From positions 1-64,000 of the IMG/VR virus record IMGVR_UViG_3300032285_004054: a DNA stretch of 64,000 nucleotides, one strand, 5' to 3'. Of the stretch, positions 1-16,205 are shown piece after piece. The translations under genes and the position numbers were made by a program. Each line of letters begins with the position of its first letter. Positions within the stretch are counted from its first letter, which is position 1. The notes under the pieces are model-generated. The model did not search any database, had not been told where the DNA came from, and saw only the letters and a program-made list of their open reading frames with translations.

Positions 1-301
1 TCCAAAGACTAGAATTGTAATCACTTATTGCCTTATCAGCATAATGCCCAAGATTTTTTATAGAGTATGCAAAATTATCTGATATATTTCTAGCTTCATT
101 TAACTCTGCTTGTTTAAATCTTATTTGACTTTCTAGCTTTTCAATATCTTCCTTAAGCTTCTGATTGCTTTCTTCTGCATCATTTAATCTATCAATTAAA
201 CTCTGCACAACATTAATATGTGCTACAGGTTCATTAGCTTCCCAAGAACTTGCTTTCATACATTGTTCTTCAGCAATGAGTCCACTATAATTTATTTTCA
301 T
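1..301 (-). CDS. hypothetical coiled-coil protein (partial, runs off window)
   Basis: Read manually: ATG at 301, MKINYSGLIAEEQ...KLKEDIEKLESQ; own sigma70 promoter. Confidence 0.7.
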   Translation of the reverse strand, partial: MKINYSGLIAEEQCMKASSWEANEPVAHINVVQSLIDRLNDAEESNQKLKEDIEKLESQIRFKQAELNEARNISDNFAYSIKNLGHYADKAISDYNSSLW

Positions 302-307
302 AATCTT

Positions 308-336
308 ATTCTATATGCTCTAGGAGGAGGTGTCAA
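308..336 (-). promoter_or_regulatory. sigma70-type early promoter
   Basis: TTGACA-17nt-TAGAAT, 6 nt before ATG at 301. Confidence 0.85.
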
Positions 337-337
337 G

Positions 338-673
338 CTACTTCTTAATCTTCAAATTTTTTACATCAACACCAAACTTCTTAGCAATGTCCTCAAAAGT
401 GACTTCTGTTACTAGGTTCGGATTAGGAATTTTATATCCTTCTGAATCATACCAATCTTCAAATCCTTCAGAGTCCTTGCGATAAATTATATTATGATTC
501 TCATCATATTCACACCAAATTTCAAACCCATTTGAGTCCTTGCAATGAATTCTATTATTATTCTTATCATACTCTTGCCAAGTTTCATATCCATCAGATT
601 CCTTACGATAGACTACATTTCCCTTTGAATCTTCGGTGATAAGTGGGTAGTTGATTACAGCTTTAATTTTCAT
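338..673 (-). CDS. short-repeat protein (YD-like beta-hairpin repeats)
   Basis: Repeats of D(S)xG(Y/F)ExWxEYDxNxNxI. Confidence 0.75.
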   Translation of the reverse strand: MKIKAVINYPLITEDSKGNVVYRKESDGYETWQEYDKNNNRIHCKDSNGFEIWCEYDENHNIIYRKDSEGFEDWYDSEGYKIPNPNLVTEVTFEDIAKKFGVDVKNLKIKK

Positions 674-679
674 ACTATC

Positions 680-708
680 AGTATATTAGAAATTTTAGGA
701 CAATGCAA
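680..708 (-). promoter_or_regulatory. sigma70-type early promoter
   Basis: TTGCAT-17nt-TATACT, 6 nt before ATG at 673. Confidence 0.8.
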
Positions 709-713
709 GAAAA

Positions 714-848
714 TTATTTTGAATTATATGTAAAAATTAACCCAATGCCTTTAAAGACTTCAAATATTCCATTTAAAAGAAATTTCATAATTTTGAGTGG
801 TTTACTTTCAGAAAATTTAATTGTCACATAGACTGATTTTTTAGTCAT
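714..848 (-). CDS. small hypothetical protein (44 aa)
   Basis: Manual translation MTKKSVYV...FTYNSK; fills gap in minus-strand gene run. Confidence 0.5.
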   Translation of the reverse strand: MTKKSVYVTIKFSESKPLKIMKFLLNGIFEVFKGIGLIFTYNSK

Positions 849-865
849 ATTATTTTAATAGAGTT

Positions 866-1036
866 CTATTGATGTTTTTCAATCTCTTCATTCAACCATT
901 CTACTTGTAAAGTTAAAAAATCTACATATTCTTTACTTGTAATTTTTTCATTTGCAAAAAGCTCATAAACAGGAGCTATAGCATCTTCAATCTGAAACCT
1001 AACATTATCAAACACTTTTGTAAATTTTTCATTCAT
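866..1036 (-). CDS. small hypothetical protein (56 aa)
   Basis: Manual translation MNEKFTKVFD...EEIEKHQ. Confidence 0.6.
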   Translation of the reverse strand: MNEKFTKVFDNVRFQIEDAIAPVYELFANEKITSKEYVDFLTLQVEWLNEEIEKHQ

Positions 1037-1056
1037 GGTTTTTATATTCTATATGC

Positions 1057-1269
1057 CTAACTCATTTTTTTTACATATGTATGATAATACTCTAACAAAT
1101 TAAGATATTGCTCTGAGCTATAATTATATTTGTTATTGATTGGTACAATTATAAAATTGAAGTCTTTAAACTTAACAGCTTTTTTAAAGTATTCTTCAAA
1201 TTCAGTTAAAGCAATGTCAGTTAATTTTAATATTGATTGTTTTTTTATGTTTGTTAGAATTTCATTCAT
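1057..1269 (-). CDS. hypothetical protein
   Basis: ORF in gene run. Confidence 0.6.
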   Translation of the reverse strand: MNEILTNIKKQSILKLTDIALTEFEEYFKKAVKFKDFNFIIVPINNKYNYSSEQYLNLLEYYHTYVKKMS

Positions 1270-1273
1270 ACTC

Positions 1274-1546
1274 TTAATAAGTGTCGAGTGTAGTGCCCAA
1301 ATCTTGTTCTTGGTTAAGAATATTAAATTTTTCTACTGCTTCTTTACCTACACCAGCAACTTGATAAAGGTAACTTTTAGTAATAAAAGAAAGTTCATGT
1401 TTATTTTTAGCAAAAGATTCAATTTCTTTTACCATATGATTAATAGCTTTGATTAGAATTTCGTTGTTTTCATTTTTCATACCTTCAGTATATAGATCTT
1501 TGTTGGACTCTGCAAGAATATTTTCTACAAGTTTATTGAATTTCAT
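1274..1546 (-). CDS. hypothetical protein with capsid-targeting-like leader
   Basis: N-term MKFNKLVENILAES; TAAATA just upstream. Confidence 0.65.
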   Translation of the reverse strand: MKFNKLVENILAESNKDLYTEGMKNENNEILIKAINHMVKEIESFAKNKHELSFITKSYLYQVAGVGKEAVEKFNILNQEQDLGTTLDTY

Positions 1547-1565
1547 ATAGATATATTTATCTTAT

Positions 1566-1594
1566 AGTCTATATGCTTTAAGAGGACTTGTCAA
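1566..1594 (-). promoter_or_regulatory. sigma70-type early promoter
   Basis: TTGACA-17nt-TAGACT. Confidence 0.8.
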
Positions 1595-1806
1595 GAAGAT
1601 TTTGGAGGACAAGGATGATTTGTTTGTTTGTCATAAGTTGTGGTTCTCCCACAAACAGCACATTCACATTCAACTAGAGAATAAGCACTCCATTGTGGAA
1701 TGTGTTCTTCATAAGGATCCCACACAGTTGTTTTACCACAGTGTTCACAAGGAGTAGTTTTAGTGTCTTTAAAACACCAAGTACATTTTAGAAGTTTGTT
1801 TTTCAT
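1591..1806 (-). CDS. small Cys-rich zinc-ribbon protein
   Basis: CTWC, CEHC, CECAVC motifs. Confidence 0.7.
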   Translation of the reverse strand: MKNKLLKCTWCFKDTKTTPCEHCGKTTVWDPYEEHIPQWSAYSLVECECAVCGRTTTYDKQTNHPCPPKSS

Positions 1807-1815
1807 GATTCTTAC

Positions 1816-1844
1816 AGTCTATATGCTTTAGGAGGAGGTGTCAA
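1816..1844 (-). promoter_or_regulatory. sigma70-type early promoter
   Basis: TTGACA-17nt-TAGACT; spacer nearly identical to promoter at 308-336. Confidence 0.85.
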
Positions 1845-2279
1845 TTAATTTCTCAGAATTGTTGTAAAGCCTTCCTGCATTCCATATCCTCCTGTTGATG
1901 GAGCAGTTGGAGGCCACCACACCCTTACTGATGCTGCTGTAGAGGCTGTTGATGAATTGATAAGCATAATTGATACTCCAAACTTTGCATCCCTTAAAGG
2001 AACAACAACACCTAGTTCATTGACATAGATTGTTGACATAGATGGATTGGTTCCACTAGGAAAAGCAATACCATAAATTGGACTAGATGTTGCATCAGAT
2101 GCTGTACACTTTAGATCAACATTAACCTCTCCTAGAATACCTACAGCTTCAGTTCTCTTTACTGTATCCCTAACCATATTCAAGCTCACTGGTATCAATC
2201 CAATCATAGGAATGATACAAAAGCCTAGAATGCCAATAGCTATGATGACCTCAATTAAAGAGAAACCTTTCTTGTTCAT
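1845..2279 (-). CDS. prepilin-type N-methylation domain protein, resembling Verru_Chthon cassette protein B
   Basis: MNKKG|FSLIEVIIAIGIL class III signal (G-1, F+1, E+5), then GLIPVSL..R and VRVWWP. Confidence 0.8.
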   Translation of the reverse strand: MNKKGFSLIEVIIAIGILGFCIIPMIGLIPVSLNMVRDTVKRTEAVGILGEVNVDLKCTASDATSSPIYGIAFPSGTNPSMSTIYVNELGVVVPLRDAKFGVSIMLINSSTASTAASVRVWWPPTAPSTGGYGMQEGFTTILRN

Positions 2280-2283
2280 ATTC

Positions 2284-2838
2284 TTATAGTGTAGTTGTAA
2301 TAATCTTATCCATCAAGCTATTATTATCTCTTTTATAAATGATCTCCATAAGCTTTCTATAATTTGGTTCTGTCTTTACTTCATGTAACAGATTATAGAT
2401 CTCTTCTTCCTCTTCAGTCAAATTAAGAACATCATAATTGAATACATCCCTCTTATGCATCTTCTTTAAGGCTACCTTATGAATCACTCTTATAAAAGGA
2501 TTCAATGGCTTCATATCAGCATAGACTGCTACAATGTCTTCAGGTTTTACTTTCTCCTTGATTTCAAATGCACCTGGATAATTGTTACAAAACCTATCCT
2601 CATTTAGTTTCTTTTTAGATATGTCTACAACAACTATAGCTCTCTTCAAAGATGGTGCAACAACTGCTGCTGATACAGCCTGATTTGTTGCCTTCTCCAT
2701 AGCATAGTCAAACCCTGAATCAAAGACATGCATATTACCAGTTGATACAGACCAGAACATAGTTGTTCCACTCCTGTATCCTTCTTTGAGAATACCTTGA
2801 GCACCCTCTAAAGATGTTCCATGGTAACCAAGTCTCAT
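2284..2838 (-). CDS. putative ADP-ribosyltransferase-fold protein
   Basis: N-term YHGTS..A..IL..G(Y/F) typical of ART/PARP-like folds. Confidence 0.55.
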   Translation of the reverse strand: MRLGYHGTSLEGAQGILKEGYRSGTTMFWSVSTGNMHVFDSGFDYAMEKATNQAVSAAVVAPSLKRAIVVVDISKKKLNEDRFCNNYPGAFEIKEKVKPEDIVAVYADMKPLNPFIRVIHKVALKKMHKRDVFNYDVLNLTEEEEEIYNLLHEVKTEPNYRKLMEIIYKRDNNSLMDKIITTTL

Positions 2839-3227
2839 TAAAAAGGAGGCTGAATCCTTCCAATCTTATAAATCCAATATGGGAATGGTGTGCTGTACCA
2901 AATATCTCGAATCTTGTCCCAAAGCCTTCTATGCCATCGATCTCTCTTATACAGATCAACAGCTACTTCAGAATGCAATACAATTAAATCATGTACAGCC
3001 TTCTTAGGATTGTTTTCATGCTCCTTTCTATAAATGTACCAGCACATCAGTTCATCAATAACTGCATCCTTCCATTTAGTCTCTCTTTGACCTTCATTAT
3101 AAGCTCCTTCCATCTGATATCGAATAAGATGATACAGAGCCTCCTTTGGATCTTTATACTCCATAGCATCGAGACCAGTAATCTCTAACTGCTCTTCAAT
3201 AGCTTCTTTCCAAATGTTCTTAGTCAT
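2838..3227 (-). CDS. hypothetical protein with internal domain duplication
   Basis: WKEAIEEQL..DPKEALYHLI and WKDAVIDEL..NPKKAVHDLI. Confidence 0.7.
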   Translation of the reverse strand: MTKNIWKEAIEEQLEITGLDAMEYKDPKEALYHLIRYQMEGAYNEGQRETKWKDAVIDELMCWYIYRKEHENNPKKAVHDLIVLHSEVAVDLYKRDRWHRRLWDKIRDIWYSTPFPYWIYKIGRIQPPF

Positions 3228-3228
3228 A

Positions 3229-3486
3229 TTATTGGGGCATAGGTGTAGATATTACATAGATCTGATCATTGTCTGTCTCATAGGCCATTGCACTATAGGA
3301 CTCTTCTGGATCTGCTTTGAAGTCACAGAACTGATAAATGCATTGATCAATAGCTTCATTGTGCCTTACAGCATGTTTGTATGATGCATCATCCCAGTTC
3401 TTAGCATCATCCATCTTAATAGAGATCTTTCGACTCTCTAGGATGTTGATGACCTCATCGTTTGTCCAATTGTCTCTCTTGAGCAT
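3229..3486 (-). CDS. hypothetical protein
   Basis: ORF with upstream promoter-like element. Confidence 0.7.
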   Translation of the reverse strand: MLKRDNWTNDEVINILESRKISIKMDDAKNWDDASYKHAVRHNEAIDQCIYQFCDFKADPEESYSAMAYETDNDQIYVISTPMPQ

Positions 3487-3517
3487 GATTTAATATTATA
3501 GGGTTCTTTAGGACAGC

Positions 3518-3739
3518 TCAAGCATCATCTTGCCAGCTCTCTCGCTCTTCAAAGTCTTCTCGATCAGCCCAACCTTCTTCAAAGATATAATCAGTCAATG
3601 CTTGTATCTCATTTGCTTTAGGGTTCCTACCGTCTTGCCGTCGAATACCTACACCTTTCGGATCGAGTATAAAGAAGTAATCAACTCCCTTAAAGGTAAT
3701 CTCTTTGATTTCGTTATTGCTGGATGAAAATTTATGCAT
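3518..3739 (-). CDS. hypothetical protein
   Basis: Probable start MHKFSS at 3739. Confidence 0.65.
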   Translation of the reverse strand: MHKFSSSNNEIKEITFKGVDYFFILDPKGVGIRRQDGRNPKANEIQALTDYIFEEGWADREDFEERESWQDDA

Positions 3740-3740
3740 A

Positions 3741-4190
3741 TTAGCTTCCCCATACAAGCTCAAGTACACGTGTACCGTCGTCCTTAGGATCAAGCTCGTA
3801 AAATCCTTCTAGGAATAGGCACGCACAGCTTCCATCCTCTGGATCAATTAGCTGTCGACCGGCTTCGGAGATAATCTCTTCCCATCGAGGATTAGACATC
3901 GTTTCACTATATACCGGATTTTCAGCAATCCTCCAATAGTCTGAAAAGAAAATACAATTACCCTCAAAGACTGGTTCATCAGACCAAATATCAGGATGAT
4001 CAACAATCCAATCTCCGTCGATATCTCCTTTATCCTTCTTACTAGTTTCAAATATTGAGAAGGTAATACCAACATTACCCTTTGCACTCCTATGCTTACA
4101 CATTGCTTCAGTAGCCTTTTGTAGGGTAGAGTAGCTAGAGGTAGCTGTATTCTTGAGAAGAGGTTCGGTTAGATCTTTCATATTTTTCAT
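3741..4190 (-). CDS. hypothetical protein
   Basis: ORF; promoter TTGTGT-17-TATATT-6nt-ATG (4197-4225). Confidence 0.75.
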   Translation of the reverse strand: MKNMKDLTEPLLKNTATSSYSTLQKATEAMCKHRSAKGNVGITFSIFETSKKDKGDIDGDWIVDHPDIWSDEPVFEGNCIFFSDYWRIAENPVYSETMSNPRWEEIISEAGRQLIDPEDGSCACLFLEGFYELDPKDDGTRVLELVWGS

Positions 4191-4227
4191 ACAATCAATA
4201 TAGAGGTTTTAAGAAGGCAACACAAGC

Positions 4228-4413
4228 TTAATACCAGTGTCTATTCATTTGTTTTGAGATTTTATAGTTATACTCTTCATTTGTAATATCCTCCAGAATA
4301 GTAGTATAACGATAATAATCGAATGCGTTACTACCTACAAAGAGGCGACGAAGCCAAATGATAAGGTATGCTAATTTAAAACTCATTTTAAACGGTAGTA
4401 GTTTGTTCTTCAT
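4228..4413 (-). CDS. small hypothetical protein
   Basis: Probable start MKNKLLPF at 4413. Confidence 0.5.
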   Translation of the reverse strand: MKNKLLPFKMSFKLAYLIIWLRRLFVGSNAFDYYRYTTILEDITNEEYNYKISKQMNRHWY

Positions 4414-4591
4414 GTTGATTGATATATTGTTGACGTTCTCTCCAAGCTCCCTCCCAAGAGTCACAAGCTGTGGAGTATTGAGCATTAAGATCTTTAATCA
4501 TTTGCTCTAGTACTTTCTTCTTAGCATCCCAATGAAGGAGCTGATTGTTGTAACCGTTTATGATTTGATTGTAGGTGTCTTCATTTTTCAT
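4388..4591 (-). CDS. hypothetical coiled-coil protein
   Basis: Promoter TTGCCG-17-CATAAT-6nt-ATG (4598-4626). Confidence 0.7.
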   Translation of the reverse strand: MKNEDTYNQIINGYNNQLLHWDAKKKVLEQMIKDLNAQYSTACDSWEGAWRERQQYINQHEEQTTTV

Positions 4592-4633
4592 ACAAGTATT
4601 ATGAATGCTTTTGCAAGGCTCGGCAAGAAGATT

Positions 4634-5191
4634 CTAATTATGAATCTCCAAGCCGAGCTGTGCGTAGAACTTCTTTCTCAGATCATTCCACTCAATAGGT
4701 GTATAATCAATCTGCTCAGCTGAGATGCAATAATACCTTGGATCTGGTATTCTAAACTCATCTCCATCAAGCATCATAACTGTTCTCTGATGAATATGTC
4801 CGTGAATGTTACCCTTGAACCTACCCAAACAATCCGGGTGAATAGGTATATGGGTAATACAGAAGCCATCTAGTACATGAAAAGCTCTAATGTCATAGAA
4901 GTATGGAAGATAGACTTTAAGTTCTCCAATATCATGGTTACCCTTAATGAGTACTTTTCTTCCATTTAGTCTCTCCATGATATGAATCTGCTTCTTTGCC
5001 TTCATTACAAGGTCTCCACAGACATAGACTTTGTCTACTGGTCGTACGACCTTGTTCCAGTTCTCGATCATAGCCTCATCCATCTCAGCAGCATTGTCCC
5101 AGGGGCGAAGCTTGGTTCCATCATCGCGAAGGAACTTACAAACTCCCTCATGACTAAAATGAGGATCGGCAATTAGAAAGGCGTTATGCAT
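4634..5191 (-). CDS. calcineurin-like metallophosphoesterase
   Basis: ADPHFSH, GD, GNHD, THIP, HGHIH motifs. Confidence 0.9.
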   Translation of the reverse strand: MHNAFLIADPHFSHEGVCKFLRDDGTKLRPWDNAAEMDEAMIENWNKVVRPVDKVYVCGDLVMKAKKQIHIMERLNGRKVLIKGNHDIGELKVYLPYFYDIRAFHVLDGFCITHIPIHPDCLGRFKGNIHGHIHQRTVMMLDGDEFRIPDPRYYCISAEQIDYTPIEWNDLRKKFYAQLGLEIHN

Positions 5192-5236
5192 GATTTTTCT
5201 ATTCTAAAGAAGAATAGATGAATAAGCAAGCTTCAA

Positions 5237-5359
5237 TCAATGAGAAGCTTGAAAGAGTTCTTCTTCTAGCTCCATGATGCGTTGATCGCGATCTCTAAGG
5301 GAAGCTTGAAGCTCCCTAATCTTCTCTTGTGCTAGTTTCAGCTCTGTCTCAGTGTCCAT
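5237..5359 (-). CDS. small coiled-coil peptide (40 aa)
   Basis: Manual translation MDTETELKLAQEKIRELQASL. Confidence 0.5.
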   Translation of the reverse strand: MDTETELKLAQEKIRELQASLRDRDQRIMELEEELFQASH

Positions 5360-5362
5360 ATG

Positions 5363-5656
5363 TTACTGTGGTTGTTCTGTTGTTGTATTTTCTGTTTCTC
5401 CCTCTTGCAGCATTCCAAACGTTAGAGCATTATGGTGTATGATACCAGTGTCTCGTTCGTTTAGATGGAAGAACTTTACCCCATCAAGGGTTACCTCCCA
5501 GTCATTATTACTAATGAGGTGTGATACAAATTCTTGATCTTCTGTTAGAAGATAGAAGTAAAAGTCTTTTGCAAGAACAGTAGAGTCGAACTTTGAATAT
5601 GCTACAGTAGTAGGTTTAAGATCAGTCATGGGAGCAGGTACAAGGACGGTCGTCAC
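5363..5656 (-). CDS. hypothetical protein (start uncertain)
   Basis: ORF in operon. Confidence 0.6.
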   Translation of the reverse strand: MTTVLVPAPMTDLKPTTVAYSKFDSTVLAKDFYFYLLTEDQEFVSHLISNNDWEVTLDGVKFFHLNERDTGIIHHNALTFGMLQEGETENTTTEQPQ

Positions 5657-5810
5657 TACCGCATTGGTTTTGAACTGGCTTTAGTACAGCATTGTTCAAA
5701 GTAAATGTAAGAATCTCTTTGAGTGTTTCGATCTCAAGCTTAAGATCTTTAATATCTTGGCCTTGAGCTTGAAGCTCGGCAATAAGGTCATTTGTATTCA
5801 TATTATTCAT
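5622..5810 (-). CDS. small coiled-coil protein
   Basis: ORF in operon. Confidence 0.6.
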   Translation of the reverse strand: MNNMNTNDLIAELQAQGQDIKDLKLEIETLKEILTFTLNNAVLKPVQNQCGSDDRPCTCSHD

Positions 5811-6039
5811 CGATAGAGGTATAGGTTACTTGATAGTTAGGTTGAAGTTCTTCGCGGAAGTCATCAATACATCCACCAATCATTTGAACGGCTTCCTTCT
5901 CGTTCATATGCTCCCACCAGACATCATCCAGACAGATAATATCAGGTAGATCGTTTAGACCCATTCCGAACTCTTTATTGAGACGAATGTTCAGAGCTTT
6001 TCGAAACTCTGACCGGGATACGTATCGTTCATTTATCAT
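5803..6039 (-). CDS. hypothetical protein
   Basis: ORF in operon. Confidence 0.65.
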   Translation of the reverse strand: MINERYVSRSEFRKALNIRLNKEFGMGLNDLPDIICLDDVWWEHMNEKEAVQMIGGCIDDFREELQPNYQVTYTSIDE

Positions 6040-6051
6040 AATAGAATTCTA

Positions 6052-6519
6052 TTAGCTATTGGCAGGCACTTCAAGCTCTTTTACGATTTTTTTCAAACGA
6101 TTAATCCGTTCGTTGCTTTCATACAGCCAGGCTTTTGTTACTTGAGTCTTCTTACCTACATCACAAATCATATCAAGAACAACTCCATTTGAGACTGTAA
6201 AGACATGACTACGTTTACGAACGTAGAAGTGCCCTCGAGGGTAATTGTACAGAAACTTGTTCAAAGACATCCTACTCCGTCCGTTAAGATCGATCTCTTT
6301 AAACTTACCTTTATCGGAATGATTCCTATTAAAGTAGGCAATAAGTTCGTGAGAGTACATTCCCTTACCGTCCTTCCTACCAGCCTTCTTACAGATCTCG
6401 TAGGCTTCTGGATAAGGAATACCCGTTACAGCGGCTAGAGTAACAACGGTACAATTGTTCTTATCTCCTTTCGGGTTATAACCTTCAAGGGTAGGACGAA
6501 TGATGGATAGTTGTTTCAT
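6052..6519 (-). CDS. putative papain/C39-like fold phage protein
   Basis: Start MKQLSII; NNCTVVTLAAVTGIPY..., HVFTV..G.V.D give a Cys-His-Asp pattern. Confidence 0.65.
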   Translation of the reverse strand: MKQLSIIRPTLEGYNPKGDKNNCTVVTLAAVTGIPYPEAYEICKKAGRKDGKGMYSHELIAYFNRNHSDKGKFKEIDLNGRSRMSLNKFLYNYPRGHFYVRKRSHVFTVSNGVVLDMICDVGKKTQVTKAWLYESNERINRLKKIVKELEVPANS

Positions 6520-6520
6520 A

Positions 6521-6955
6521 TTATGCGACCTCCTTCTTGAGATGGCAGAGGCAGTTACTAAAGAACGAACAGCCATAGCAGTTTCGTCCGTTATCAAGAT
6601 AGAGGCTAGGAGCCGCACAGCTAAAAGCTGTAATCGACTGAATGATATCAGGAGCATCCTTAAGATAAACATCACGAGGGATGCTCATCTTCATCTTAGG
6701 AATCTCGTAGATAACCTCTTCCTTCTCTTTCTTAATGCGAGGGGTAGAAGCTTTCTTTGCTGGCTTGGAAGCTCCCTTGCAGTTTCTGCAGACAAAAGTC
6801 TCCAGAAGATTGGAAAGACCTCCGAACTTCTTAATACGATTCTCGAGGTTTGTCCCGAACATCGTGACACCCTCGTTGCATTTAGAACAAGCAACCTTCG
6901 GGGAAGGAAGTTTGCCGTTCTTGTTGAAGTACTCTAGCATTTCTTTATTCTTCAT
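6521..6955 (-). CDS. zinc-binding basic protein
   Basis: CSKC, CRNC and C-terminal Cys cluster; promoter TTGTGG-17-CATAAT-6nt-ATG. Confidence 0.75.
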   Translation of the reverse strand: MKNKEMLEYFNKNGKLPSPKVACSKCNEGVTMFGTNLENRIKKFGGLSNLLETFVCRNCKGASKPAKKASTPRIKKEKEEVIYEIPKMKMSIPRDVYLKDAPDIIQSITAFSCAAPSLYLDNGRNCYGCSFFSNCLCHLKKEVA

Positions 6956-7165
6956 ACGTCTATTATGGATTCTGGGCAAAGGAACCACAAGCAAAATTTT
7001 CTGCTTGATTCATTTTTTGATATTTCTATCATCAAGGAACAATGAAAAAGTACATATCTTTGATTTCCTACACAACTGCAATTATACTAAGTTTACTACT
7101 TTGGTACTTTGCAATTAAAGGTTTGATTTACTTGTTTGTTTACATTACAGAATAAGTAATATGTA

Positions 7166-7393
7166 ATGGCTACAATTAAGCATTTTGGCGGACAAGATTA
7201 CAAAGTCCTTCACAAAGGGAAGGAATACGGACCTATGTCTATAGAAGACGCTAGAGAGAAAGTAGCTGAAATTGAAGAAGGCGAACGTAACCTTACACCA
7301 GATGAGGTAGCAGCAGGATTTGCTGAAATGAGAAGAAAGTTAAATGGCGAAAGCTTCAGCCAATTTTTTAAATCACGTCAAGTAGACCTTTAA
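7166..7393 (+). CDS. hypothetical protein
   Basis: ORF preceded by ATAAGTA; convergent overlap with next gene. Confidence 0.7.
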   Translation: MATIKHFGGQDYKVLHKGKEYGPMSIEDAREKVAEIEEGERNLTPDEVAAGFAEMRRKLNGESFSQFFKSRQVDL

Positions 7394-7757
7394 AGCTGTC
7401 TCTTGTTTCAGGAGAAAGCATCTTCTCAAGAAAAGATTGCGCAGTTATATTCTGAACAGGTGATAGAGCTTCATTTGTAGCTTTAAATCTATTAAAGATA
7501 GCCCAGAGTATATCATCATATGAACCGTATGTACCATCTTTAAATACCATTTGTAGAACATTGTCTTCTTTCTTTAAAGAATCTTCGTAATCCGAATGTA
7601 CAGCATCTTTAAAGTTACACTTAGGTTGATTACTATAATGTAACGCTAAAACAATCTTATGATAGAATAGAGCTTTAACTTTAACATCGCCATACTTGTC
7701 TTTGTCAAGTGATACATCATCATCAAATGTAATAGTTAATAGGATAGGGTCTTTCAT
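7368..7757 (-). CDS. C-terminal-tag family protein 5
   Basis: Ends LSPETRDSFKGLLDVI. Confidence 0.8.
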   Translation of the reverse strand: MKDPILLTITFDDDVSLDKDKYGDVKVKALFYHKIVLALHYSNQPKCNFKDAVHSDYEDSLKKEDNVLQMVFKDGTYGSYDDILWAIFNRFKATNEALSPVQNITAQSFLEKMLSPETRDSFKGLLDVI

Positions 7758-8392
7758 TAGTCAAGTACGTCTAGTAAACCTCCAAATGCTTTAGCAGTAG
7801 GATCACTTAATTCATCTTTATAACTTTTATCAGTCATAGGGTAGATGTATCTAAAATTATCTGTTTTACCATTAGGGAACAATGTATGGTTCCAGCTTGT
7901 CTTCTTTTGTATGTCAACTGGGAAGCTATTTATGTTAAAATGCCTTGTATGAATAGGTTCAAAGAAGTATAGAGCATCATGATAGTTTATAAAGTTACCA
8001 CCTGTAAAGTATTCAATGTTCGTTTCAAGATCTTTTACTACAGCTAGGAAAGCTACTGTTGGTACTTTTGTTTTTTCAATACCTCTGACCTTAACAATAG
8101 GCCATAATTTTAATTGTAAGAACTTCCAATCATGTCTATAGATAGGAGTATTCTTATCGTAATCTTCGTAATCCTTATGTTTTGGATCTCTCATACGTAC
8201 CTGCTCAAATTGCAGCTGTGTAACTAATCTATAGATTAGTACTGCTTTTAATGCATCTAAAGATTTATGTTCAGTAAACGGCTTAAACGCTTGTTCGGTA
8301 TCTGATGACCAAACAGCAATACTCATAATACTATCAATTGTGCCTTGATAGTAATGACTCTTAATATCGTAATTTATATTGTTAGAGGACAT
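7757..8392 (-). CDS. C-terminal-tag family protein 4
   Basis: Ends LSDPTAKAFGGLLDVLD. Confidence 0.8.
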   Translation of the reverse strand: MSSNNINYDIKSHYYQGTIDSIMSIAVWSSDTEQAFKPFTEHKSLDALKAVLIYRLVTQLQFEQVRMRDPKHKDYEDYDKNTPIYRHDWKFLQLKLWPIVKVRGIEKTKVPTVAFLAVVKDLETNIEYFTGGNFINYHDALYFFEPIHTRHFNINSFPVDIQKKTSWNHTLFPNGKTDNFRYIYPMTDKSYKDELSDPTAKAFGGLLDVLD

Positions 8393-8780
8393 CTAATAAA
8401 CCTCCAAATGTTTCTTCAGTATCTTTTGAAAGAGACTTCTTTAGTATATAATTCTCTCTTTTTGCTAACGGCCACTCTTTATCGAGATATTCTTCAATTA
8501 TCTCTCTTTCTTCATAGTCTATAGGTTTACCTAGAACTCTATTACCGAACTCATCTTTTTCTAAATTGTAACAGCCTCCGTCATATCTGCGACCTCTGTC
8601 ATCTTCATCTTTCCATATGACTATATCTCGTTTACCGTCTAAGATTAGATACCAAGCCCAGTGCATGTTCTCAGGACCATCGCGATGCTTTTTAAGATCA
8701 ACAAATTCTATAGTAATACCAACAACATGATTGCCGCCATAACGATCTGTTGGGTATGTTGTTTTGTAAATATTACTCAT
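8382..8780 (-). CDS. C-terminal-tag family protein 3
   Basis: Ends LSKDTEETFGGLLDVL. Confidence 0.8.
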   Translation of the reverse strand: MSNIYKTTYPTDRYGGNHVVGITIEFVDLKKHRDGPENMHWAWYLILDGKRDIVIWKDEDDRGRRYDGGCYNLEKDEFGNRVLGKPIDYEEREIIEEYLDKEWPLAKRENYILKKSLSKDTEETFGGLLDVL

Positions 8781-9142
8781 ATAACGTCAAGTAGTCCTCC
8801 AAATGAATCTTTAGTTTTCTTAGACAGATGTTTCTCTATTTTATATTTTTCAATAGCTTTGTCAATTTGAGAGGATAATTCATCCAATGCACCAATATAA
8901 CCATCACCCTCATCTTTCATTCCTAAAACGTTTCTCCATTCTCCGTTTTGATATTTTGAATCAGTAGTCCAAGGCCATTCTCTAGTTTTGTTCCAAGTCA
9001 TCTTCAATCCATCAACTACAATATCGACAAGCATATCATCGGAGTAAGCCTGATTAGGTGAGTCTTCGTTGTAGTAGACATCACTCTTAATTTGTATATC
9101 GTACACTCTTTCTTTTGATTCAAAGAATTTCTTAAATGACAT
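8777..9142 (-). CDS. C-terminal-tag family protein 2 with capsid-targeting-like leader
   Basis: Starts MSFKKFFESK; ends LSKKTKDSFGGLLDVI. Confidence 0.8.
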   Translation of the reverse strand: MSFKKFFESKERVYDIQIKSDVYYNEDSPNQAYSDDMLVDIVVDGLKMTWNKTREWPWTTDSKYQNGEWRNVLGMKDEGDGYIGALDELSSQIDKAIEKYKIEKHLSKKTKDSFGGLLDVI

Positions 9143-9572
9143 CGATTAAACCTCCAAATGAATTTCTTGTATCTTTTGAGAGTGTTCTCTTTAGGTATTC
9201 ACTCTCTGGTTCTATTTTATAATCTTCATCTACTAACCCGTTCATTAAGTCTCTGTACTCTTCAGGAGCTACAAAGCGGGTAATCATATTCATAAATGTA
9301 GTGCTATCGCTTTTGCTGTCAAGCTTTATTTTTATAATCATTTTTCCATTGCCTATCTCATCCATGTCTATATTATTCACAACATCAATTCCTTTGATAT
9401 TATTACCGTAACCCTCCGGACCAGATCTAACAATATACTCAAAACGCTCAAATATATCTAGATTTGTTTTCTTTTGCCTCTCAGCTTCTTCTTCATTGAT
9501 ATACAATGTAACATAAACAACAGAGTCTAAAGACTCCGTCAGTAGAAGTTTCAATGCATGATCAAGATTCAT
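9132..9572 (-). CDS. C-terminal-tag family protein 1
   Basis: Starts MNLDHALKLLLTES; ends LSKDTRNSFGGLIDVI. Confidence 0.8.
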   Translation of the reverse strand: MNLDHALKLLLTESLDSVVYVTLYINEEEAERQKKTNLDIFERFEYIVRSGPEGYGNNIKGIDVVNNIDMDEIGNGKMIIKIKLDSKSDSTTFMNMITRFVAPEEYRDLMNGLVDEDYKIEPESEYLKRTLSKDTRNSFGGLIDVI

Positions 9573-9576
9573 ACAT

Positions 9577-9582
9577 TATTTA
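9577..9582 (-). promoter_or_regulatory. T4-type late promoter core (TAAATA) for the tag operon
   Basis: TAAATAATGTATG, identical 13-mer to the one at 39931-39943. Confidence 0.7.
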
Positions 9583-9583
9583 A

Positions 9584-9612
9584 TTGCTTTTGCAGACGTT
9601 CCAATATACTAT
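9584..9612 (+). promoter_or_regulatory. sigma70-type early promoter
   Basis: TTGCTT-17nt-TACTAT-6nt-ATG. Confidence 0.75.
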
Positions 9613-9618
9613 AGTGTC

Positions 9619-10473
9619 ATGTCAAAACTTTTAATCATAGGAGATGTCCATAATCATTGGGTACATGCTCAATCGATTATTGATAAGTACAAGGATACCC
9701 ATAAGATTATCCTGATCGGAGACTACTTCGATAACTTTGGTGATACAGCTTTAGATGCTAAGCAAACAGCTACCTGGCTTAAGGAAACTATTCATACTGA
9801 TAACGTTATTGCTCTTATGGGTAACCACGATATCCATTATTCTCCCTACAGTACAGTAAAGAGTAGAACAAATACTCATCAGCTTTATAGTTGTTCAGGA
9901 TATTCTCCTGCGAAGGATGATATCATTTCGACTGTACTTACTGATGAGGATTGGAGGAGGATTAAGATCTATCATTACGAGAATGGATGGCTTTTTAGTC
10001 ACGGGGGGTTTCATCCATTCTGGATTGAGCATCCTATACTTGGTACAAAGATTGAACATATCCAATCTCTGATGGAGAAGGCCCAGCACGAGCTTGAAGA
10101 TAAAACGTTTTCTGCTATTCTAGGTACTGCCGGACGCTGTCGTGGTGGGTCGGCTCGTGCAGGAGGTATCTTGTGGATGGATCATCAACAAGAAGCTATC
10201 CCTATGAGAGATATTAAGCAGGTATATGGACATACACCTGTACGTAAAGGTATTGATATCTACGAAGATAACGGAGGTATTAACATCGACGTTGACTGTG
10301 GCCTTGAAGAAGTGCTTGAAATCAACGAAGATGGTTCCTATAACATAATCAAAACCAGCTTTGATAATTTTTATAATGAATCAGAAAGGAAGCTTCGAGA
10401 GGAGCAACAGAAAATTTTAAAACAGAAGTATTCTTCTCTCGGAGCTTACGATGACATTTATAAGAACATATAA
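9619..10473 (+). CDS. calcineurin-like metallophosphoesterase
   Basis: GDVHN, GDYFD, GNHD, SHGG, GHTP motifs. Confidence 0.9.
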   Translation: MSKLLIIGDVHNHWVHAQSIIDKYKDTHKIILIGDYFDNFGDTALDAKQTATWLKETIHTDNVIALMGNHDIHYSPYSTVKSRTNTHQLYSCSGYSPAKDDIISTVLTDEDWRRIKIYHYENGWLFSHGGFHPFWIEHPILGTKIEHIQSLMEKAQHELEDKTFSAILGTAGRCRGGSARAGGILWMDHQQEAIPMRDIKQVYGHTPVRKGIDIYEDNGGINIDVDCGLEEVLEINEDGSYNIIKTSFDNFYNESERKLREEQQKILKQKYSSLGAYDDIYKNI

Positions 10474-10844
10474 TGACTAACCACGAAAAGATAATTGAAC
10501 TGAATAAGATCTGGTACAGGCTTATTGCAGGAGACCATCACAAAGATAGAGACTGTCATTTCAGGATTAACACTCATTACTTTTATGGTGATCATGTTGA
10601 ATATGAAGTAGAACATCATGGTTACATTCTAAGGGATATTGATGTTGTAGAGTTCGGTACCCTAGAAGACGCTCAGAACTATCTTATTGAACAAGTTCTT
10701 AAGAAGGGAATCATAGAAGAAGCAACTTGGTACATAAATCTACCTAAGCCGGAAACTATGGGATGCCATGATGAACATCCAACCTATAGTAGAGATGAAC
10801 TGGAAGAGATTGTAACAAAAGTATTATCAATAACTAATCATTAA
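10473..10844 (+). CDS. hypothetical protein
   Basis: TAATG coupling to upstream gene. Confidence 0.7.
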   Translation: MTNHEKIIELNKIWYRLIAGDHHKDRDCHFRINTHYFYGDHVEYEVEHHGYILRDIDVVEFGTLEDAQNYLIEQVLKKGIIEEATWYINLPKPETMGCHDEHPTYSRDELEEIVTKVLSITNH

Positions 10845-10946
10845 ACGATATATTAGTACTAGAAGCTTCTTAAAGGAACTGCAAGCTGGAATTTATTTTA
10901 TTTTCCAATTGCGGTTCCATGCTATTGCCTTTATTATAATAGCATA

Positions 10947-11852
10947 ATGAACGTTGTAACTACATCTCAAACAGGATTCTGCAAAGTATCCGATATCAAG
11001 ATCCCGTCGATCTACAATCGACGCTTCAAGACTGGCAAGGAAGATCTCGACGCCGTCTTCGGTGGTCAGGGATTTCTCCCTGGTATGTCTTTTACAATGG
11101 CAGCCGGTCCAGGTACCGGTAAGACAACGATGCTGATTCAGATGCTCGAGCAGCTTGAGCGTACCGGTAAAAAAACCGCGTATGTTTCCGGTGAAGAGTC
11201 TATCCATCAGCTTGCTTTTACTTGTAAGCGTCTTGGAGTGACGAATGTATCAGTTGCGAATATGTCTGTTATCGAAGATGTATTCGATGCGATTAAGGAA
11301 GCAAAATGTGATATCGTTATTCTCGATTCACTTCCTGCTTTTACTACGCGAGAAAAACTGCGTGGTCGCCTGCTTGAGGAATACCTCAGTAACTATATTG
11401 TTACTAAGGCTAAAGAACTTGAAGTGGTTGTCGGTGTTATTCTCCACTTTACAAAAACCGGTACGTATAAAGGCTCTACTCTGCTTCCGCATTCGGTTGA
11501 TTGTAATATCATTATGTCGAAGTCGGAAGAAAACCCGAGTGTTCGAGAGATCGAGGTTACAAAAAACCGGTTCGGTGTTAGCGGGTTTAGTGCCTTTATG
11601 ATGACTGAGACCGGCTTTGACTTTCAGAAAGTAGAAGTCGAAGACGATGATAATGCACCGAAGAAAAAAGGTAAGATGGATCAGGCTCGAGATCAAGTAA
11701 TGGGTGTTATCAAAGCTGATGGATCTATTAATCTTCAGAAAGCATCTAACCTACTTGGATGCTCAGTTAAAGCTCAAACCATTCTTCGAGATCTGACACT
11801 GCAAGGTATCATCAAGAAGAACGGTCGTGGAACCGACGCAACTTGGAACTAA
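10947..11852 (+). CDS. RadA/Sms-like RecA-family ATPase
   Basis: TG..DLDAVFGG.G..PG, Walker A GPGTGKTT, YVSGEES, ILDS, HFTK.G, KNRFG; lacks RadA Zn finger and Lon-like domain. Confidence 0.85.
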   Translation: MNVVTTSQTGFCKVSDIKIPSIYNRRFKTGKEDLDAVFGGQGFLPGMSFTMAAGPGTGKTTMLIQMLEQLERTGKKTAYVSGEESIHQLAFTCKRLGVTNVSVANMSVIEDVFDAIKEAKCDIVILDSLPAFTTREKLRGRLLEEYLSNYIVTKAKELEVVVGVILHFTKTGTYKGSTLLPHSVDCNIIMSKSEENPSVREIEVTKNRFGVSGFSAFMMTETGFDFQKVEVEDDDNAPKKKGKMDQARDQVMGVIKADGSINLQKASNLLGCSVKAQTILRDLTLQGIIKKNGRGTDATWN

Positions 11853-11866
11853 AACAAATAAATACT

Positions 11867-12094
11867 ATGGACACAGTCATGACAGACCCAAAGAACAAAA
11901 AGGACACAACTAAGAAGCCTATCAAGCCTTATATCATTAAAAAGATAGAGGCTGTAGAGATACTAGATGAGTCAGGTGAAGTAAACGAGAGCACTATTGT
12001 AAAGCTAAAAGCTGATGATGGTATTATCTGGAACCTTTCTATTGGAGCTTCTTATAGACTTGTAAGAGATTTAAGAGATATACTTGACCTTTAA
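11867..12094 (+). CDS. hypothetical protein
   Basis: ATAAATAC before ATG 11867. Confidence 0.6.
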   Translation: MDTVMTDPKNKKDTTKKPIKPYIIKKIEAVEILDESGEVNESTIVKLKADDGIIWNLSIGASYRLVRDLRDILDL

Positions 12095-13358: not shown

Positions 13359-14855
13359 ATGTCTACAATATACGATTTAGCTAGTGTAGGATTCGCTCTT
13401 GATACAAGCTATCAATATAGTCTTAGCGGTTTTAATGTAACTCAGAACGATTTTTTAGTTATAAAGTTACGCAATGATCTCGGAATTTATAATAATTCCG
13501 TTATTTGGCCAGTAGCATCTAATGCGTCTTTGAGTAGCGCTTTTGGAGGCATCGCTCCTTTACAATCACTACCCACTTTACCTTTTTCAAGATCAACAAG
13601 TGCAACAAGAGTAAATTCAAACGGGTTAATTGAATATGTAAACCCAAATGTACCTAGAATTGATTACGACCCTGTAACTCTTCAAAGTAGAGGTCTTTTA
13701 ATAGAGAATACACGTACAAATTTATTTACACAATCTACAAACCCTATTACAGTATATAACGCTGGTGGTAGTTTAGGATCCGGAGGTACGTTATGTAACT
13801 GGGGGTATCTATTATCTGCAACAGGTGTTGCTAATTCAGGAATTGCGCCTGATGGTACCAACACAGCGTACTATATAGTACCTCTTTACGGGTACGGTAT
13901 TAAACGTTTTACAAAATCGTTTTCTTCAGGTATTCCGCAATTTCAAAATATTACATTCTCGGTTTTTGCAAAAGCAAGTGGTTATTCTTCCTTTGGTATA
14001 GGTTTTTCAGATACTGCTAACGGTAATTTCGTAGGTAGTGCTCGATTTAATGTCAATCCTTTAGCGTTATCGTGTTACCCGCCAACAGGCAGAATAACAA
14101 ATACAACAATACAACCTTATGCAAGTGGCTGGTACCGCGCATCGATAACACTATCAGGAACTAATCTTGCATTTACTCAAGTATATGTCAGCCTTCTTTC
14201 GTCTATGGGGGCTCTTTACGGTAGTGGTGGTACAGGAGGTACCGGTACAAATGGTGTTGACGGTATGTACTTCTGGGGACCTCAATTAGAAGTAATTCCT
14301 ACATCATATAGCAGTGATAATAGTTTATACCCTACATCATATATACCCACAGGTAGTACAACAGCAACACGTACATATGATATTGTAACACTTACAACAC
14401 AAAATAGTTTATCCTCGTTTTTAAATCAAGGAGCAGGTACCTGGGTTGCTGAGTTTACTACCCCTGGTACACCGCCTAGTGCATGTACAGTTATTGATTA
14501 TAATAGCGTAAACGGCACCATGATAAACCTTACTGGAGGGTTTGTTACAACTTATAATACCGATACAAGTATTAATTCAACTTTTAAACCTCTACCAGGT
14601 ATTGATAATATCAATAGAACTGCTTTTAGTTATACAACTGGTGGAAGCCTTAGTGGGAGAGCAATAGCAATTAACGGAAATGTATTATTCGATACTGCTG
14701 CTCCGTTTAATAATGTTGCAGTTACAGCAGTTAATATAGGTGGTAATAACGACGGGACAGGTAATATAAATGGCTGGTTAGGACAACTTGAATATTATAA
14801 TGTTTCTCTTCCTAACAGTATATTACAAACATTAACTCTACCTTCGGAGCTTTAA
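13359..14855 (+). CDS. virion spike/fibre protein with lectin-like (LamG-type) C-terminus
   Basis: FSRSTSATRVNSNGLIE..PRIDYDP...GLLIE.TRTNL, WGPQLE..PTSYIPT...ATR motifs. Confidence 0.8.
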   Translation: MSTIYDLASVGFALDTSYQYSLSGFNVTQNDFLVIKLRNDLGIYNNSVIWPVASNASLSSAFGGIAPLQSLPTLPFSRSTSATRVNSNGLIEYVNPNVPRIDYDPVTLQSRGLLIENTRTNLFTQSTNPITVYNAGGSLGSGGTLCNWGYLLSATGVANSGIAPDGTNTAYYIVPLYGYGIKRFTKSFSSGIPQFQNITFSVFAKASGYSSFGIGFSDTANGNFVGSARFNVNPLALSCYPPTGRITNTTIQPYASGWYRASITLSGTNLAFTQVYVSLLSSMGALYGSGGTGGTGTNGVDGMYFWGPQLEVIPTSYSSDNSLYPTSYIPTGSTTATRTYDIVTLTTQNSLSSFLNQGAGTWVAEFTTPGTPPSACTVIDYNSVNGTMINLTGGFVTTYNTDTSINSTFKPLPGIDNINRTAFSYTTGGSLSGRAIAINGNVLFDTAAPFNNVAVTAVNIGGNNDGTGNINGWLGQLEYYNVSLPNSILQTLTLPSEL

Positions 14856-14856
14856 T

Positions 14857-16203: not shown

Positions 16204-16205
16204 AC

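What the first reader, a model, noticed from the sequence alone, without database searches (positions are those of the whole stretch)
1845..2279. Phage-encoded host-type minor pilin
The protein has an intact class III signal (KG|FSLIEVIIAIGIL) and overall resembles Verru_Chthon cassette protein B of Verrucomicrobia. It sits among early genes with no other pilus genes in the window. Inference: it is processed by host prepilin peptidase and could jam or remodel the pilus/T2SS-like receptor (superinfection exclusion by pilin mimicry). It also points to the host phylum.
Basis: partly seen in the sequence, partly recalled or inferred. Interest (0 to 1): 0.62.

Follow-up and report, generated by a model that had tools for sequence, protein, structure and literature searches.

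The report
Jumbo phage carries host-type minor pilin
An uncultured 218-kb phage carries one complete, well-conserved copy of a small pilus-tip subunit otherwise found almost only in Verrucomicrobiota bacteria, which suggests its host group and that it tampers with the host's pilus, as one recently described group of Pseudomonas phages does.

Summary
Window 1845-2279 (-) encodes a 144-aa protein with an intact prepilin signal (MNKKG|FSLIEV). It passes the PF07963 and TIGR02532 cut-offs.

It is homologous over its whole length (30-45% identity) to the Verru_Chthon cassette protein B family. It scores below that model's curated cut-off (35.1 against 51.4 bits).

Its predicted fold matches the type II secretion minor pseudopilins GspI, XcpV and EpsI (Z 8.0-9.6).

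The record is a 218.4-kb virus genome with no other pilin, prepilin peptidase or cassette partner.

Five related phage contigs carry the gene, and the copies form one clade. dN/dS is 0.09-0.16, and GC matches the phage (39%) rather than cellular homologues (median 56%). This is an old, selected acquisition.

Of the 80 best genome loci, 78 are Verrucomicrobiota.

In two relatives the gene has its own copy of a conserved early-type promoter-like element.

The function is inferred, not shown. The host peptidase would process the protein, which would then enter the host minor-pilin priming complex and alter or block the filament, giving receptor-level exclusion. Prophage P-FimU in Pseudomonas (Cell Rep 2026) is a published precedent for the principle. 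A complex prediction with a host GspJ-like partner gave only weak support.

The parts
1845..2279 (-). Complete coding sequence of the phage pilin-like protein (144 aa; stop codon 1845-1847)
   Evidence: ORF list and translation. PF07963 and TIGR02532 are over their cut-offs and TIGR02598 is the best family hit. There are 1168 homologues.
2265..2279 (-). Leader peptide MNKKG. The predicted prepilin-peptidase cut lies after G5 (between nt 2265 and 2264)
   Evidence: Read directly from the sequence. The N_methyl motif matches residues 2-23. Cleavage itself is inferred.
2193..2264 (-). Hydrophobic N-terminal part of helix alpha-1 (mature residues F1 to about 24, including E5). This is the membrane anchor and filament-core segment
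   Evidence: The AF2 model has a helix at 8-57 with pLDDT >90. F6, L8 and E10 are invariant in 50 family members.
1848..2108 (-). Globular C-terminal domain (residues 58-144) with a four-stranded sheet. It holds the family-invariant W122-P123 and G133
   Evidence: AF2 model. VIA-align gives XcpV Z 9.6, GspI Z 8.9 and EpsI Z 8.0 over model residues 35-144. Alignment A1.
2284..2838 (-). Upstream 184-aa ORF whose stop lies 4 nt before the pilin ATG. It is probably co-transcribed and is a possible ADP-ribosyltransferase-like protein
   Evidence: ORF list. Weak DUF6912 and phrog_3303 hits. The atlas feature search gives a lead only. The ORF is absent at this place in related contig L002.
2392..2421 (-). 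Candidate internal sigma-70-like promoter (TTGACT-N18-TATAAT, 11 of 12) about 110 nt upstream of the pilin ATG
   Evidence: Consensus scan only. The total number of such sites in the region is not above the shuffles.
1816..1844 (-). Conserved promoter-like element TTGACACCTCCTCCTAAAGCATATAGACT. It starts right after the pilin stop and drives the next gene (ATG at 1806), so it marks the end of the pilin transcription unit
   Evidence: Three copies in the window against 0 expected. Six copies in the genome, all on the - strand. The same element sits directly upstream of the pilin gene in L002 and L003.

Best explanation
What it is: a functional, phage-borne copy of the GspI/PilV-class minor pilin (protein B) of the Verrucomicrobial 'Verru_Chthon' minor-pilin cassettes. 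An ancestor of this jumbo-phage lineage captured it long ago.

Proposed mechanism (inferred):
- The gene is expressed with the early small-gene block.
- The protein inserts into the host inner membrane.
- The host prepilin peptidase cuts it after G5, since the phage has no such peptidase.
- It competes with host B subunits for the GspJ-like C partner and for the shared assembly platform.
- It thereby replaces the tip or priming complex of the host's type IV filament (pilus or pseudopilus), or blocks its formation when overproduced.
- The likely pay-off is receptor-level exclusion of other phages, or of its own progeny adsorbing to cells already infected.

Shown: the sequence features, homology, fold, conservation and phage residence.

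Inferred: processing, incorporation and the exclusion phenotype.
For: - Intact class III signal, with all invariant and near-invariant family residues retained: F6, L8, E10, D55, W122, P123, G133.
- Full-length homology to 1168 proteins. All 50 aligned members hit TIGR02598.
- A cellular sister-clade member, P0155, lies in a GspH-like / B / GspJ-like / 1425-aa / 280-aa cassette.
- The AF2 model has pLDDT 89.6. Its three best structural matches are all GspI-family proteins, each aligned nearly end to end (Z 9.6, 8.9, 8.0).
- The phage copies form a starred clade nested inside a starred cellular clade.
- dN/dS among close phage copies is 0.09-0.16.
- Gene GC is 38.6% and GC3 25.5%, against cellular loci with a median of 56.5%.
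- The gene is kept in five related phage contigs while its neighbours are reshuffled.
- It has its own early-type promoter element in L002, L003 and L007.
- The phage genome has no peptidase and no cassette partner.
- Predicted complex with the host GspJ-like protein C: ipSAE 0.40 (runs 0.50, 0.40, 0.32) against a best control of 0.00. Partner pLDDT was at least 52 and the runs agreed in at least 52% of contacts. The tool rates this as weak support. In its calibration 51 of 78 solved complexes and 2 of 108 mismatches reached the mark. Only 5 of those 78 solved complexes scored 0.60 or under, while all 4 mismatches that passed did.
- Precedent: prophage P-FimU proteins replace FimU at the T4P tip and block tip-binding phages. 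Overexpressed FimU disrupts assembly. PilA-like genes also occur in virulent phages (PMC12952977).
Against: - No experiment or expression data exist.
- Nothing shows that the host filament is a receptor for this or any other phage.
- The function of the Verru_Chthon cassettes is itself undescribed in the searched literature.
- The complex score is only weak, and it was obtained with a partner from a bacterium that need not be the host.
- The protein has no extra loops that could mask a binding surface, unlike P-FimU. Its mature length is 139 aa against a family median of 144.
- In this genome the gene has lost its own promoter element.
- Phage GC (36%) is 7-29 points below every candidate host locus.
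Confidence: 0.5

Rival explanations
1. Host-function booster (auxiliary gene). The phage supplies the nucleating B subunit to keep the host filament working, or to stimulate it, during infection. The filament's role might be adhesion, secretion of polymer-degrading enzymes or DNA uptake. Host gene expression is shut down at that stage, so the supply would benefit phage yield rather than exclude competitors.
For: The protein looks fully assembly-competent. All conserved residues are present, its size is normal for the family and it has no masking loops. GspI-type subunits nucleate the tip complex (structures 3ci0 and 5bw0 matched; their role is from established knowledge). Cassettes sit next to glycoside hydrolase, transporter and PATR adhesin genes in L103.
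Against: Only one of four or five cassette proteins is supplied. Hosts can hold dozens of B paralogues, 61 matches in one genome, so one more copy is unlikely to be limiting. No precedent was found in the searched literature.
Confidence: 0.17
2. Membrane protein re-used for something unrelated to pili. It might control lysis timing or take part in another membrane process. In this reading the pilin signature is only an inherited membrane-targeting device.
For: The gene sits alone, without partners, among unknown small genes. Its function is untested.
Against: Purifying selection acts on the whole protein, and the family-specific residues of the globular domain (D55, W122-P123, G133) are retained. 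That would not be expected if only the N-terminal helix mattered. The GspI-like fold is predicted with high confidence.
Confidence: 0.1
3. Not a phage gene. It would be a bacterial fragment mis-assembled or mis-binned into a viral contig, or a very recent passenger with no function.
For: The record is metagenomic and is classed as linear, with no end repeats.
Against: The gene's GC and GC3 match the phage, not the bacteria. Copies at 94%, 94%, 80% and 53-55% identity lie in five other phage-like contigs from other samples, embedded in homologous phage genes. dN/dS is well below 1. Phage-type promoter elements flank it.
Confidence: 0.02

Closest known systems
Verru_Chthon cassette protein B (NCBIfam TIGR02598), cellular
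   Same: It is the best family hit. Homology runs the full length at 30-45% identity to proteins that pass the model's cut-off (for example P0007 at 59.8 bits). The invariant residues are shared. The phage clade nests inside a cellular clade of this family.
   Different: The protein scores 35.1 bits, under the 51.4 cut-off. It is encoded by a virus. It is an orphan without the neighbouring D (GspH-like), C (GspJ-like) and A (about 1400 aa) genes. Its composition is AT-rich.
GspI / XcpV / EpsI minor pseudopilins of type II secretion (PDB 3ci0_I, 5bw0_B, 2ret_A) and the equivalent T4P PilV
   Same: The fold matches: a long N-terminal helix plus a small sheet, with Z 8.0-9.6 covering 82-86 of the 83-89 target residues. 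The size class is the same. It has a class III signal with E5. Weak N-terminal matches to the PilV, XpsI and GspI models occur in the protein or its relatives. In cellular cassettes the gene follows a GspH-like gene and precedes a GspJ-like gene, as in gspHIJK.
   Different: Sequence identity to the solved chains is only 8-10%. No GspI or PilV model reaches its cut-off. Foldseek alone did not rank them significantly: XcpV came at rank 24 with E about 1.
P-FimU, prophage-encoded FimU-like minor pilins of F10-like Pseudomonas aeruginosa phages (Sztanko et al., Cell Rep 2026, PMC12952977)
   Same: Both are phage-encoded copies of a host minor pilin that lack the rest of the pilus genes. P-FimU is incorporated at the pilus tip and blocks adsorption of tip-binding phages. 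That is the mechanism proposed here by analogy.
   Different: The subunit class differs (FimU/GspH-like there, GspI/PilV-like here). The host phylum differs. The phage type differs: temperate siphophages expressing the gene from the prophage there, against a 218-kb phage with no integrase found and the gene in an early-type block here. P-FimU carries extra loops, and this protein does not. The function here is untested.
Non-pilin phage inhibitors of type IV pili: D3112 Gp05 (known to me as Tip), DMS3 Aqs1, vB_Pae_QDWS Gp21
   Same: They are listed as receptor-inactivation superinfection-exclusion proteins of Pseudomonas phages (review PMC11436027). The proposed biological pay-off is the same.
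   Different: By my own knowledge they are small proteins that act on the assembly ATPase PilB or its partners, and are not pilin homologues. The route proposed here is substitution or titration at the level of the filament subunits.

Membership tests
Prepilin-type N-terminal cleavage/methylation domain (PF07963 / TIGR02532) | Score over the curated cut-offs | tested here: met
   PF07963 scores 27.5 bits against 21.2, and TIGR02532 scores 21.9 bits against 16.3. The six-frame genome search gives 31.3 bits.
Prepilin-type N-terminal cleavage/methylation domain (PF07963 / TIGR02532) | Short basic leader ending in G, then F+1, E+5 and about 20 hydrophobic residues forming the start of a long helix | tested here: met
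   The sequence reads MNKKG|FSLIEVIIAIGILGFCIIPMIGLIPV. The model has a helix at 8-57.
Prepilin-type N-terminal cleavage/methylation domain (PF07963 / TIGR02532) | Actual cleavage and N-methylation by a prepilin peptidase | not testable with these tools
   The phage genome has no Peptidase_A24 match, so the host enzyme would be required. This is inference.
Verru_Chthon cassette protein B (TIGR02598) | Score at or above the curated cut-off of 51.4 bits | tested here: not met
   P0001 scores 35.1 bits, and phage relatives score 38.7 and 44.5. Of eight close cellular relatives, four pass (52.7-59.8) and four do not (36.5-43.9).
Verru_Chthon cassette protein B (TIGR02598) | Full-length homology to, and phylogenetic nesting within, proteins of the family | tested here: met
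   Alignments span residues 4-144. All 50 members of A1 hit TIGR02598. The phage clade (95-97*) lies inside a starred clade (97-98*) that includes cut-off-passing members P0006, P0007, P0010 and P0013.
Verru_Chthon cassette protein B (TIGR02598) | Location in a multi-gene cassette with proteins D, C and A | tested here: not met
   Cellular copies sit in such cassettes. The phage genome has no TIGR02599 or TIGR02600 match and no second N_methyl gene.
GspI / PilV class of minor (pseudo)pilins | GspI-type fold of the soluble domain | tested here: met
   The top three of 48,161 chains are XcpV (Z 9.6, rmsd 2.4, 86 aligned), GspI (Z 8.9) and EpsI (Z 8.0). The next rows score 6.6 or less. Caveat: Foldseek found nothing at E<=1e-3.
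GspI / PilV class of minor (pseudo)pilins | Sequence-model membership (TIGR01707 gspI, TIGR02523 PilV, NF047828 XpsI) | tested here: not met
   PilV scores 20.4 bits against 52.2 and XpsI 15.9 against 150. Only the N-terminus matches.
GspI / PilV class of minor (pseudo)pilins | Forms a complex with a GspJ/PilW-like partner | tested here: inconclusive
   Complex prediction with the cassette C protein of L009 gave ipSAE 0.40 against a best control of 0.00, rated 'weak support'.
Phage pilin mimics of the P-FimU type | Phage-encoded homologue of a host minor pilin, present without other pilus genes | tested here: met
Phage pilin mimics of the P-FimU type | Homology to FimU/GspH, and extra surface loops relative to the host protein | tested here: not met
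   The fold and family hits are I/V-class, not H/FimU-class. The mature length of 139 aa sits at the family's lower quartile, against a median of 144.
Phage pilin mimics of the P-FimU type | Incorporation into the pilus and a block of phage adsorption | not testable with these tools
   This needs a cultured host and phage.

The most novel reading that the evidence does not exclude
A virulent jumbo phage of Verrucomicrobiota expresses a GspI/PilV-class nucleator minor pilin from (near-)leaderless early transcripts. The subunit plugs into a host machinery served by many alternative minor-pilin cassettes, up to dozens per genome. It re-programmes or shuts down the filament tip and so excludes rival phages. 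This would extend the receptor-subunit replacement principle of P-FimU to lytic phages, to another subunit class and to another phylum. It would also give the first functional handle on the uncharacterised and hugely expanded Verru_Chthon cassettes.
Probability: 0.3. Interest if true: 0.65.

Novelty: new variant of a known kind. Interest (0 to 1): 0.5.

Why it matters
The gene gives a sequence-based host assignment for an uncultured lineage of roughly 220-kb phages. The assignment is to Verrucomicrobiota that carry Verru_Chthon cassettes, a phylum with very few known phages.

If the mimicry reading is right, replacement or titration of a receptor subunit by a phage-made pilin would not be peculiar to temperate Pseudomonas phages. 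It would be a wider strategy that lytic phages also use, and it would involve the nucleating I/V-class subunit.

It would also point to a role for the Verru_Chthon cassettes in phage-host conflict. I found no literature on these cassettes, and they reach 61 B-type matches in one Chthoniobacteraceae genome.

The limits are real. The host is uncultured and unidentified, and every functional step is inferred.

Tried and rejected
- Megablast of window 1-12000 and tblastn of the protein against 50,697 GenBank phage records gave no match.
- The word-indexed protein search found only two close relatives. The exhaustive search was therefore justified, and it opened up the family.
- phmmer against PDB sequences gave only marginal N-terminal hits.
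- Foldseek against PDB and BFVD gave nothing at E<=1e-3. The exhaustive VIA-align search did find the GspI family.
- PHROGs has no family for this protein.
- IMG/VR scans with the protein and with the family alignment found only one further viral contig, a close relative of the same lineage.
- Finer host assignment failed. The sister cellular clade consists of metagenome proteins only. A member's contig (L009) carries a SecY that is 57-70% identical to five named Verrucomicrobiota genomes, so the order is unresolved. Handles carry no taxonomy.
- A bacterial contig with a sister-clade cassette comes from the same two samples as phage contigs L002 and L003. Its GC is 60%, so co-occurrence is only a hint.
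- One genome search failed on a wrong 'of' argument and was corrected.
- Complex prediction gave 'weak support' only. I do not count it as evidence of binding.
- Literature searches for the Verru_Chthon cassette, the TIGR accessions and a Verrucomicrobia phage pilin found nothing relevant.
- The contamination or chimera reading was rejected (see rivals).

Full report
**1. Observation**

The - strand of window 1845-2279 holds an ATG-initiated ORF of 144 codons. Its product begins MNKKG|FSLIEVIIAIGILGF. This is a short basic leader ending in glycine, followed by Phe+1, Glu+5 and a hydrophobic stretch.

It passes the curated cut-offs of PF07963 (27.5 against 21.2 bits) and TIGR02532 (21.9 against 16.3).

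The best NCBIfam hit is TIGR02598, 'Verru_Chthon cassette protein B', at E 1.4e-8. It scores only 35.1 bits against a cut-off of 51.4, and the match covers only residues 5-60.

The family resemblance needed a better test than the HMM alone.

**2. The genome**

The window is bases 1-64000 of a 218,400-bp IMG/VR virus record. CheckV rates it 100% complete, it has no end repeats, and its GC is 36%.

The window carries phage-type genes:
- tail and tail-fibre proteins, an ATPase and an HNH endonuclease;
- PA14/GLEYA, PATR, PKD and 'Phage tail tip' domains;
- three tRNAs.

Related contigs carry a T4-type baseplate gene. No integrase was found.

In the whole genome there is exactly one GFxxxE motif and one N_methyl match. 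There is no prepilin peptidase, no T2SSE ATPase over the cut-off, and no match to cassette proteins C or A.

**3. The family**

The word-indexed search found only two close relatives. The exhaustive HMMER search found 1168 proteins at E<=1e-3 and 100 at E<=1e-10. Most aligned over residues 4-144 at 30-45% identity.

In an alignment of 50 members, F6, L8, E10, D55, W122 and P123 are invariant. M1, S7, A14, G16, L28, P30, T43, G90 and G133 are nearly invariant. The phage protein has all of them.

All 50 hit TIGR02598, and 24 also hit PilV weakly. JGI names several 'TIGR02598 family'.

Of eight close cellular relatives, four pass the 51.4-bit cut-off and four do not. The three phage proteins score 35-45 bits. 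The model is narrow. The phage protein fails its letter but belongs to the wider family.

Cellular members sit in cassettes. In L009 and L010 the order is:
- a 258-aa GspH-like pilin (TIGR02596);
- B;
- a 308-aa GspJ-like pilin (TIGR02599);
- a 1425-aa protein;
- a 280-aa protein.

The same layout occurs in L103 and L105.

**4. Fold**

With the family alignment, AlphaFold2 gives pLDDT 89.6 and pTM 0.74. The model has a helix at 8-57 followed by a four-stranded sheet.

Foldseek found nothing significant in the PDB. The exhaustive VIA-align search ranks three GspI-family chains first:
- XcpV, Z 9.6, 86 of 89 residues aligned;
- GspI, Z 8.9, 83 of 83;
- EpsI, Z 8.0, 82 of 84.

The next rows score Z 6.6 or less.

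Taken with the H-I-J-like gene order of the cassettes, protein B is the GspI/PilV-equivalent subunit. In T2SS and T4P this is the subunit that pairs with GspJ/PilW to nucleate the tip complex. That role comes from established knowledge of those systems.

**5. It is a real, old, selected phage gene**

Copies lie on other phage-like contigs:
- L002 and L003, 94% identity;
- L006 (IMG/VR UViG, 81.7 kb), 94%;
- P0003, 80%;
- L007 (a 225-kb contig) and L008, 53-55%.

Their neighbours are homologous to G000 genes at 2-11 kb and at 202-217.6 kb. The two ends of the record therefore adjoin in relatives. The gene lies in a reshuffled block of small same-strand ORFs.

The phage proteins form one starred clade (95-97*). 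It sits inside a starred clade (97-98*) of cellular metagenome proteins.

dN/dS is 0.16, 0.09 and 0.13 among the close copies.

Gene GC is 38.6% and GC3 25.5%, like the phage. Cellular loci range from 43 to 65% with a median of 56.5%.

**6. Host pointer**

Of the 80 best loci in species-representative genomes, 78 are titled Verrucomicrobiota. They are mostly Chthoniobacterales (Chthoniobacteraceae, Terrimicrobiaceae, Udaeobacter) and Methylacidiphilales. The two exceptions are MAG contigs, one Alphaproteobacteria contig of 1.8 kb and one Bryobacteraceae contig.

That scan used one N-terminal peptide pattern, so it is somewhat biased. TIGR02598 rings in 0 of 14 control genomes, however.

One complete Chthoniobacteraceae genome has 61 matches, 27 of them over the cut-off. 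In 201 sampled genomes of the phylum only 4 are over the cut-off. Only 6 of 401 match the phage protein at E<=1e-8. The family marks a subset of the phylum.

The sister clade could not be named. A member's contig carries a SecY that is 57-70% identical to named Verrucomicrobiota.

The large GC gap between the phage and all candidate hosts is a caution.

**7. Expression context**

A 29-nt element, TTGACACCTCCTCCTAAAGCATATAGA[AC]T, occurs six times in the genome. All copies are on the - strand and all lie in the terminal small-ORF block. Each has its -10 hexamer 6-10 nt before an ATG. The window holds 3 copies against 0 expected.

In the window, one copy starts directly after the pilin stop and serves the next gene. 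The pilin ATG itself lies 4 nt after the stop of a 184-aa ORF.

In L002 and L003 the pilin gene has its own copy of the element, 6 nt before the ATG. L007 has a TTGACA-N17-TAGAAT variant.

This supports host-RNA-polymerase (early-type) expression, but it is inference.

**8. Mechanism**

The protein looks assembly-competent, is under selection and lacks partners. The best-supported reading has three steps. The host peptidase processes it. It then competes with host B subunits for the GspJ-like partner and the assembly platform. That gives a changed or blocked filament and receptor-level exclusion.

The direct precedent is P-FimU (PMC12952977). These prophage FimU-like pilins are built into the T4P tip and block tip-binding phages. 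The same paper notes that overexpressed FimU disrupts assembly. It also reports that virulent phages carry PilA-like genes.

A predicted complex of the phage domain with the L009 C protein scored ipSAE 0.40 against controls of 0.00. The tool rates this 'weak support'.

Replacement and jamming cannot be told apart here. The normal size and the lack of extra loops differ from P-FimU.

Three rivals are laid out with their evidence: a function-sustaining auxiliary gene, an unrelated membrane role, and an assembly artefact. The artefact reading is rejected.

**9. Novelty**

The principle is published, but for a different subunit class, phylum and phage lifestyle. No paper in the library mentions the cassette or a Verrucomicrobial phage pilin.

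I rate it a new variant of a known kind, of moderate interest. The main limit is that neither host nor phage is in culture.

Noticed in passing
window 308-336, 1566-1594, 1816-1844 (- strand); G000 213116-213144, 217783-217811, 218349-218377: A conserved 29-nt sigma-70-like promoter element, TTGACACCTCCTCCTAAAGCATATAGA[AC]T. Its -10 hexamer lies only 6-10 nt before the ATG of small ORFs, which implies nearly leaderless early transcripts. The same element is abundant in related contigs L002, L003, L006 and L007.
   Followed up: partly
window 2284-2838 (-): A 184-aa ORF ends 4 nt before the pilin start and carries a GYHGTS motif. An atlas feature search points to H-Y-E-type ADP-ribosyltransferases (DarT/PARP, Arr, Tox-ART-HYD1) at scores of 0.92-0.93 with few shared features, so this is a lead only. 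It is absent at this position in L002, where a promoter element sits instead.
   Followed up: partly
window 1-9000 together with G000 202000-218400: Genes at the two ends of the linear record are neighbours in related contigs (L002, L006, L007). The record is therefore probably a circularly permuted or arbitrarily opened complete genome. The small-ORF block runs across its ends.
   Followed up: partly
window 13359-29838, 17169-19601 (-), 60597-62120: A tail and tail-fibre block with lectin-like and adhesin-like domains: PA14/GLEYA, PATR repeats plus a glycine-rich domain, a phage tail tip domain and PKD. A giant PATR-repeat protein also flanks a bacterial cassette (L103).
   Followed up: no
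G001 (CP170506.1, Chthoniobacteraceae SH-KS-3), whole genome: There are 61 TIGR02598 matches (27 over the cut-off) in one 5.6-Mb genome, against 4 of 201 sampled genomes of the phylum over the cut-off. This is an extreme, lineage-restricted expansion of minor-pilin cassettes of unknown function.
   Followed up: partly
L103 / L104 (gene at 10001-10495) and L002 / L003: A 60%-GC bacterial contig carries a sister-clade cassette (P0010, 38% identical to the phage protein). It comes from the same two samples (JGI 3300045480; ENA ERZ28594453) as phage contigs that carry the 94%-identical pilin. This is a weak co-occurrence hint to the host.
   Followed up: partly
window 43821-43895, 44040-44130, 46290-46373 (-): Three phage tRNA genes: Cys-GCA, a long 91-nt Ser with anticodon ACT, and Thr-TGT. 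They lie next to a 616-aa HNH-endonuclease-like ORF (41946-43796).
   Followed up: no
L105 1058-1972 (P0009, 304 aa): In one cellular lineage the B-type domain is called as the C-terminal half (residues 154-303) of a 304-aa product that overlaps the upstream gene's end. This is either a fused B protein or a start codon called too early.
   Followed up: no
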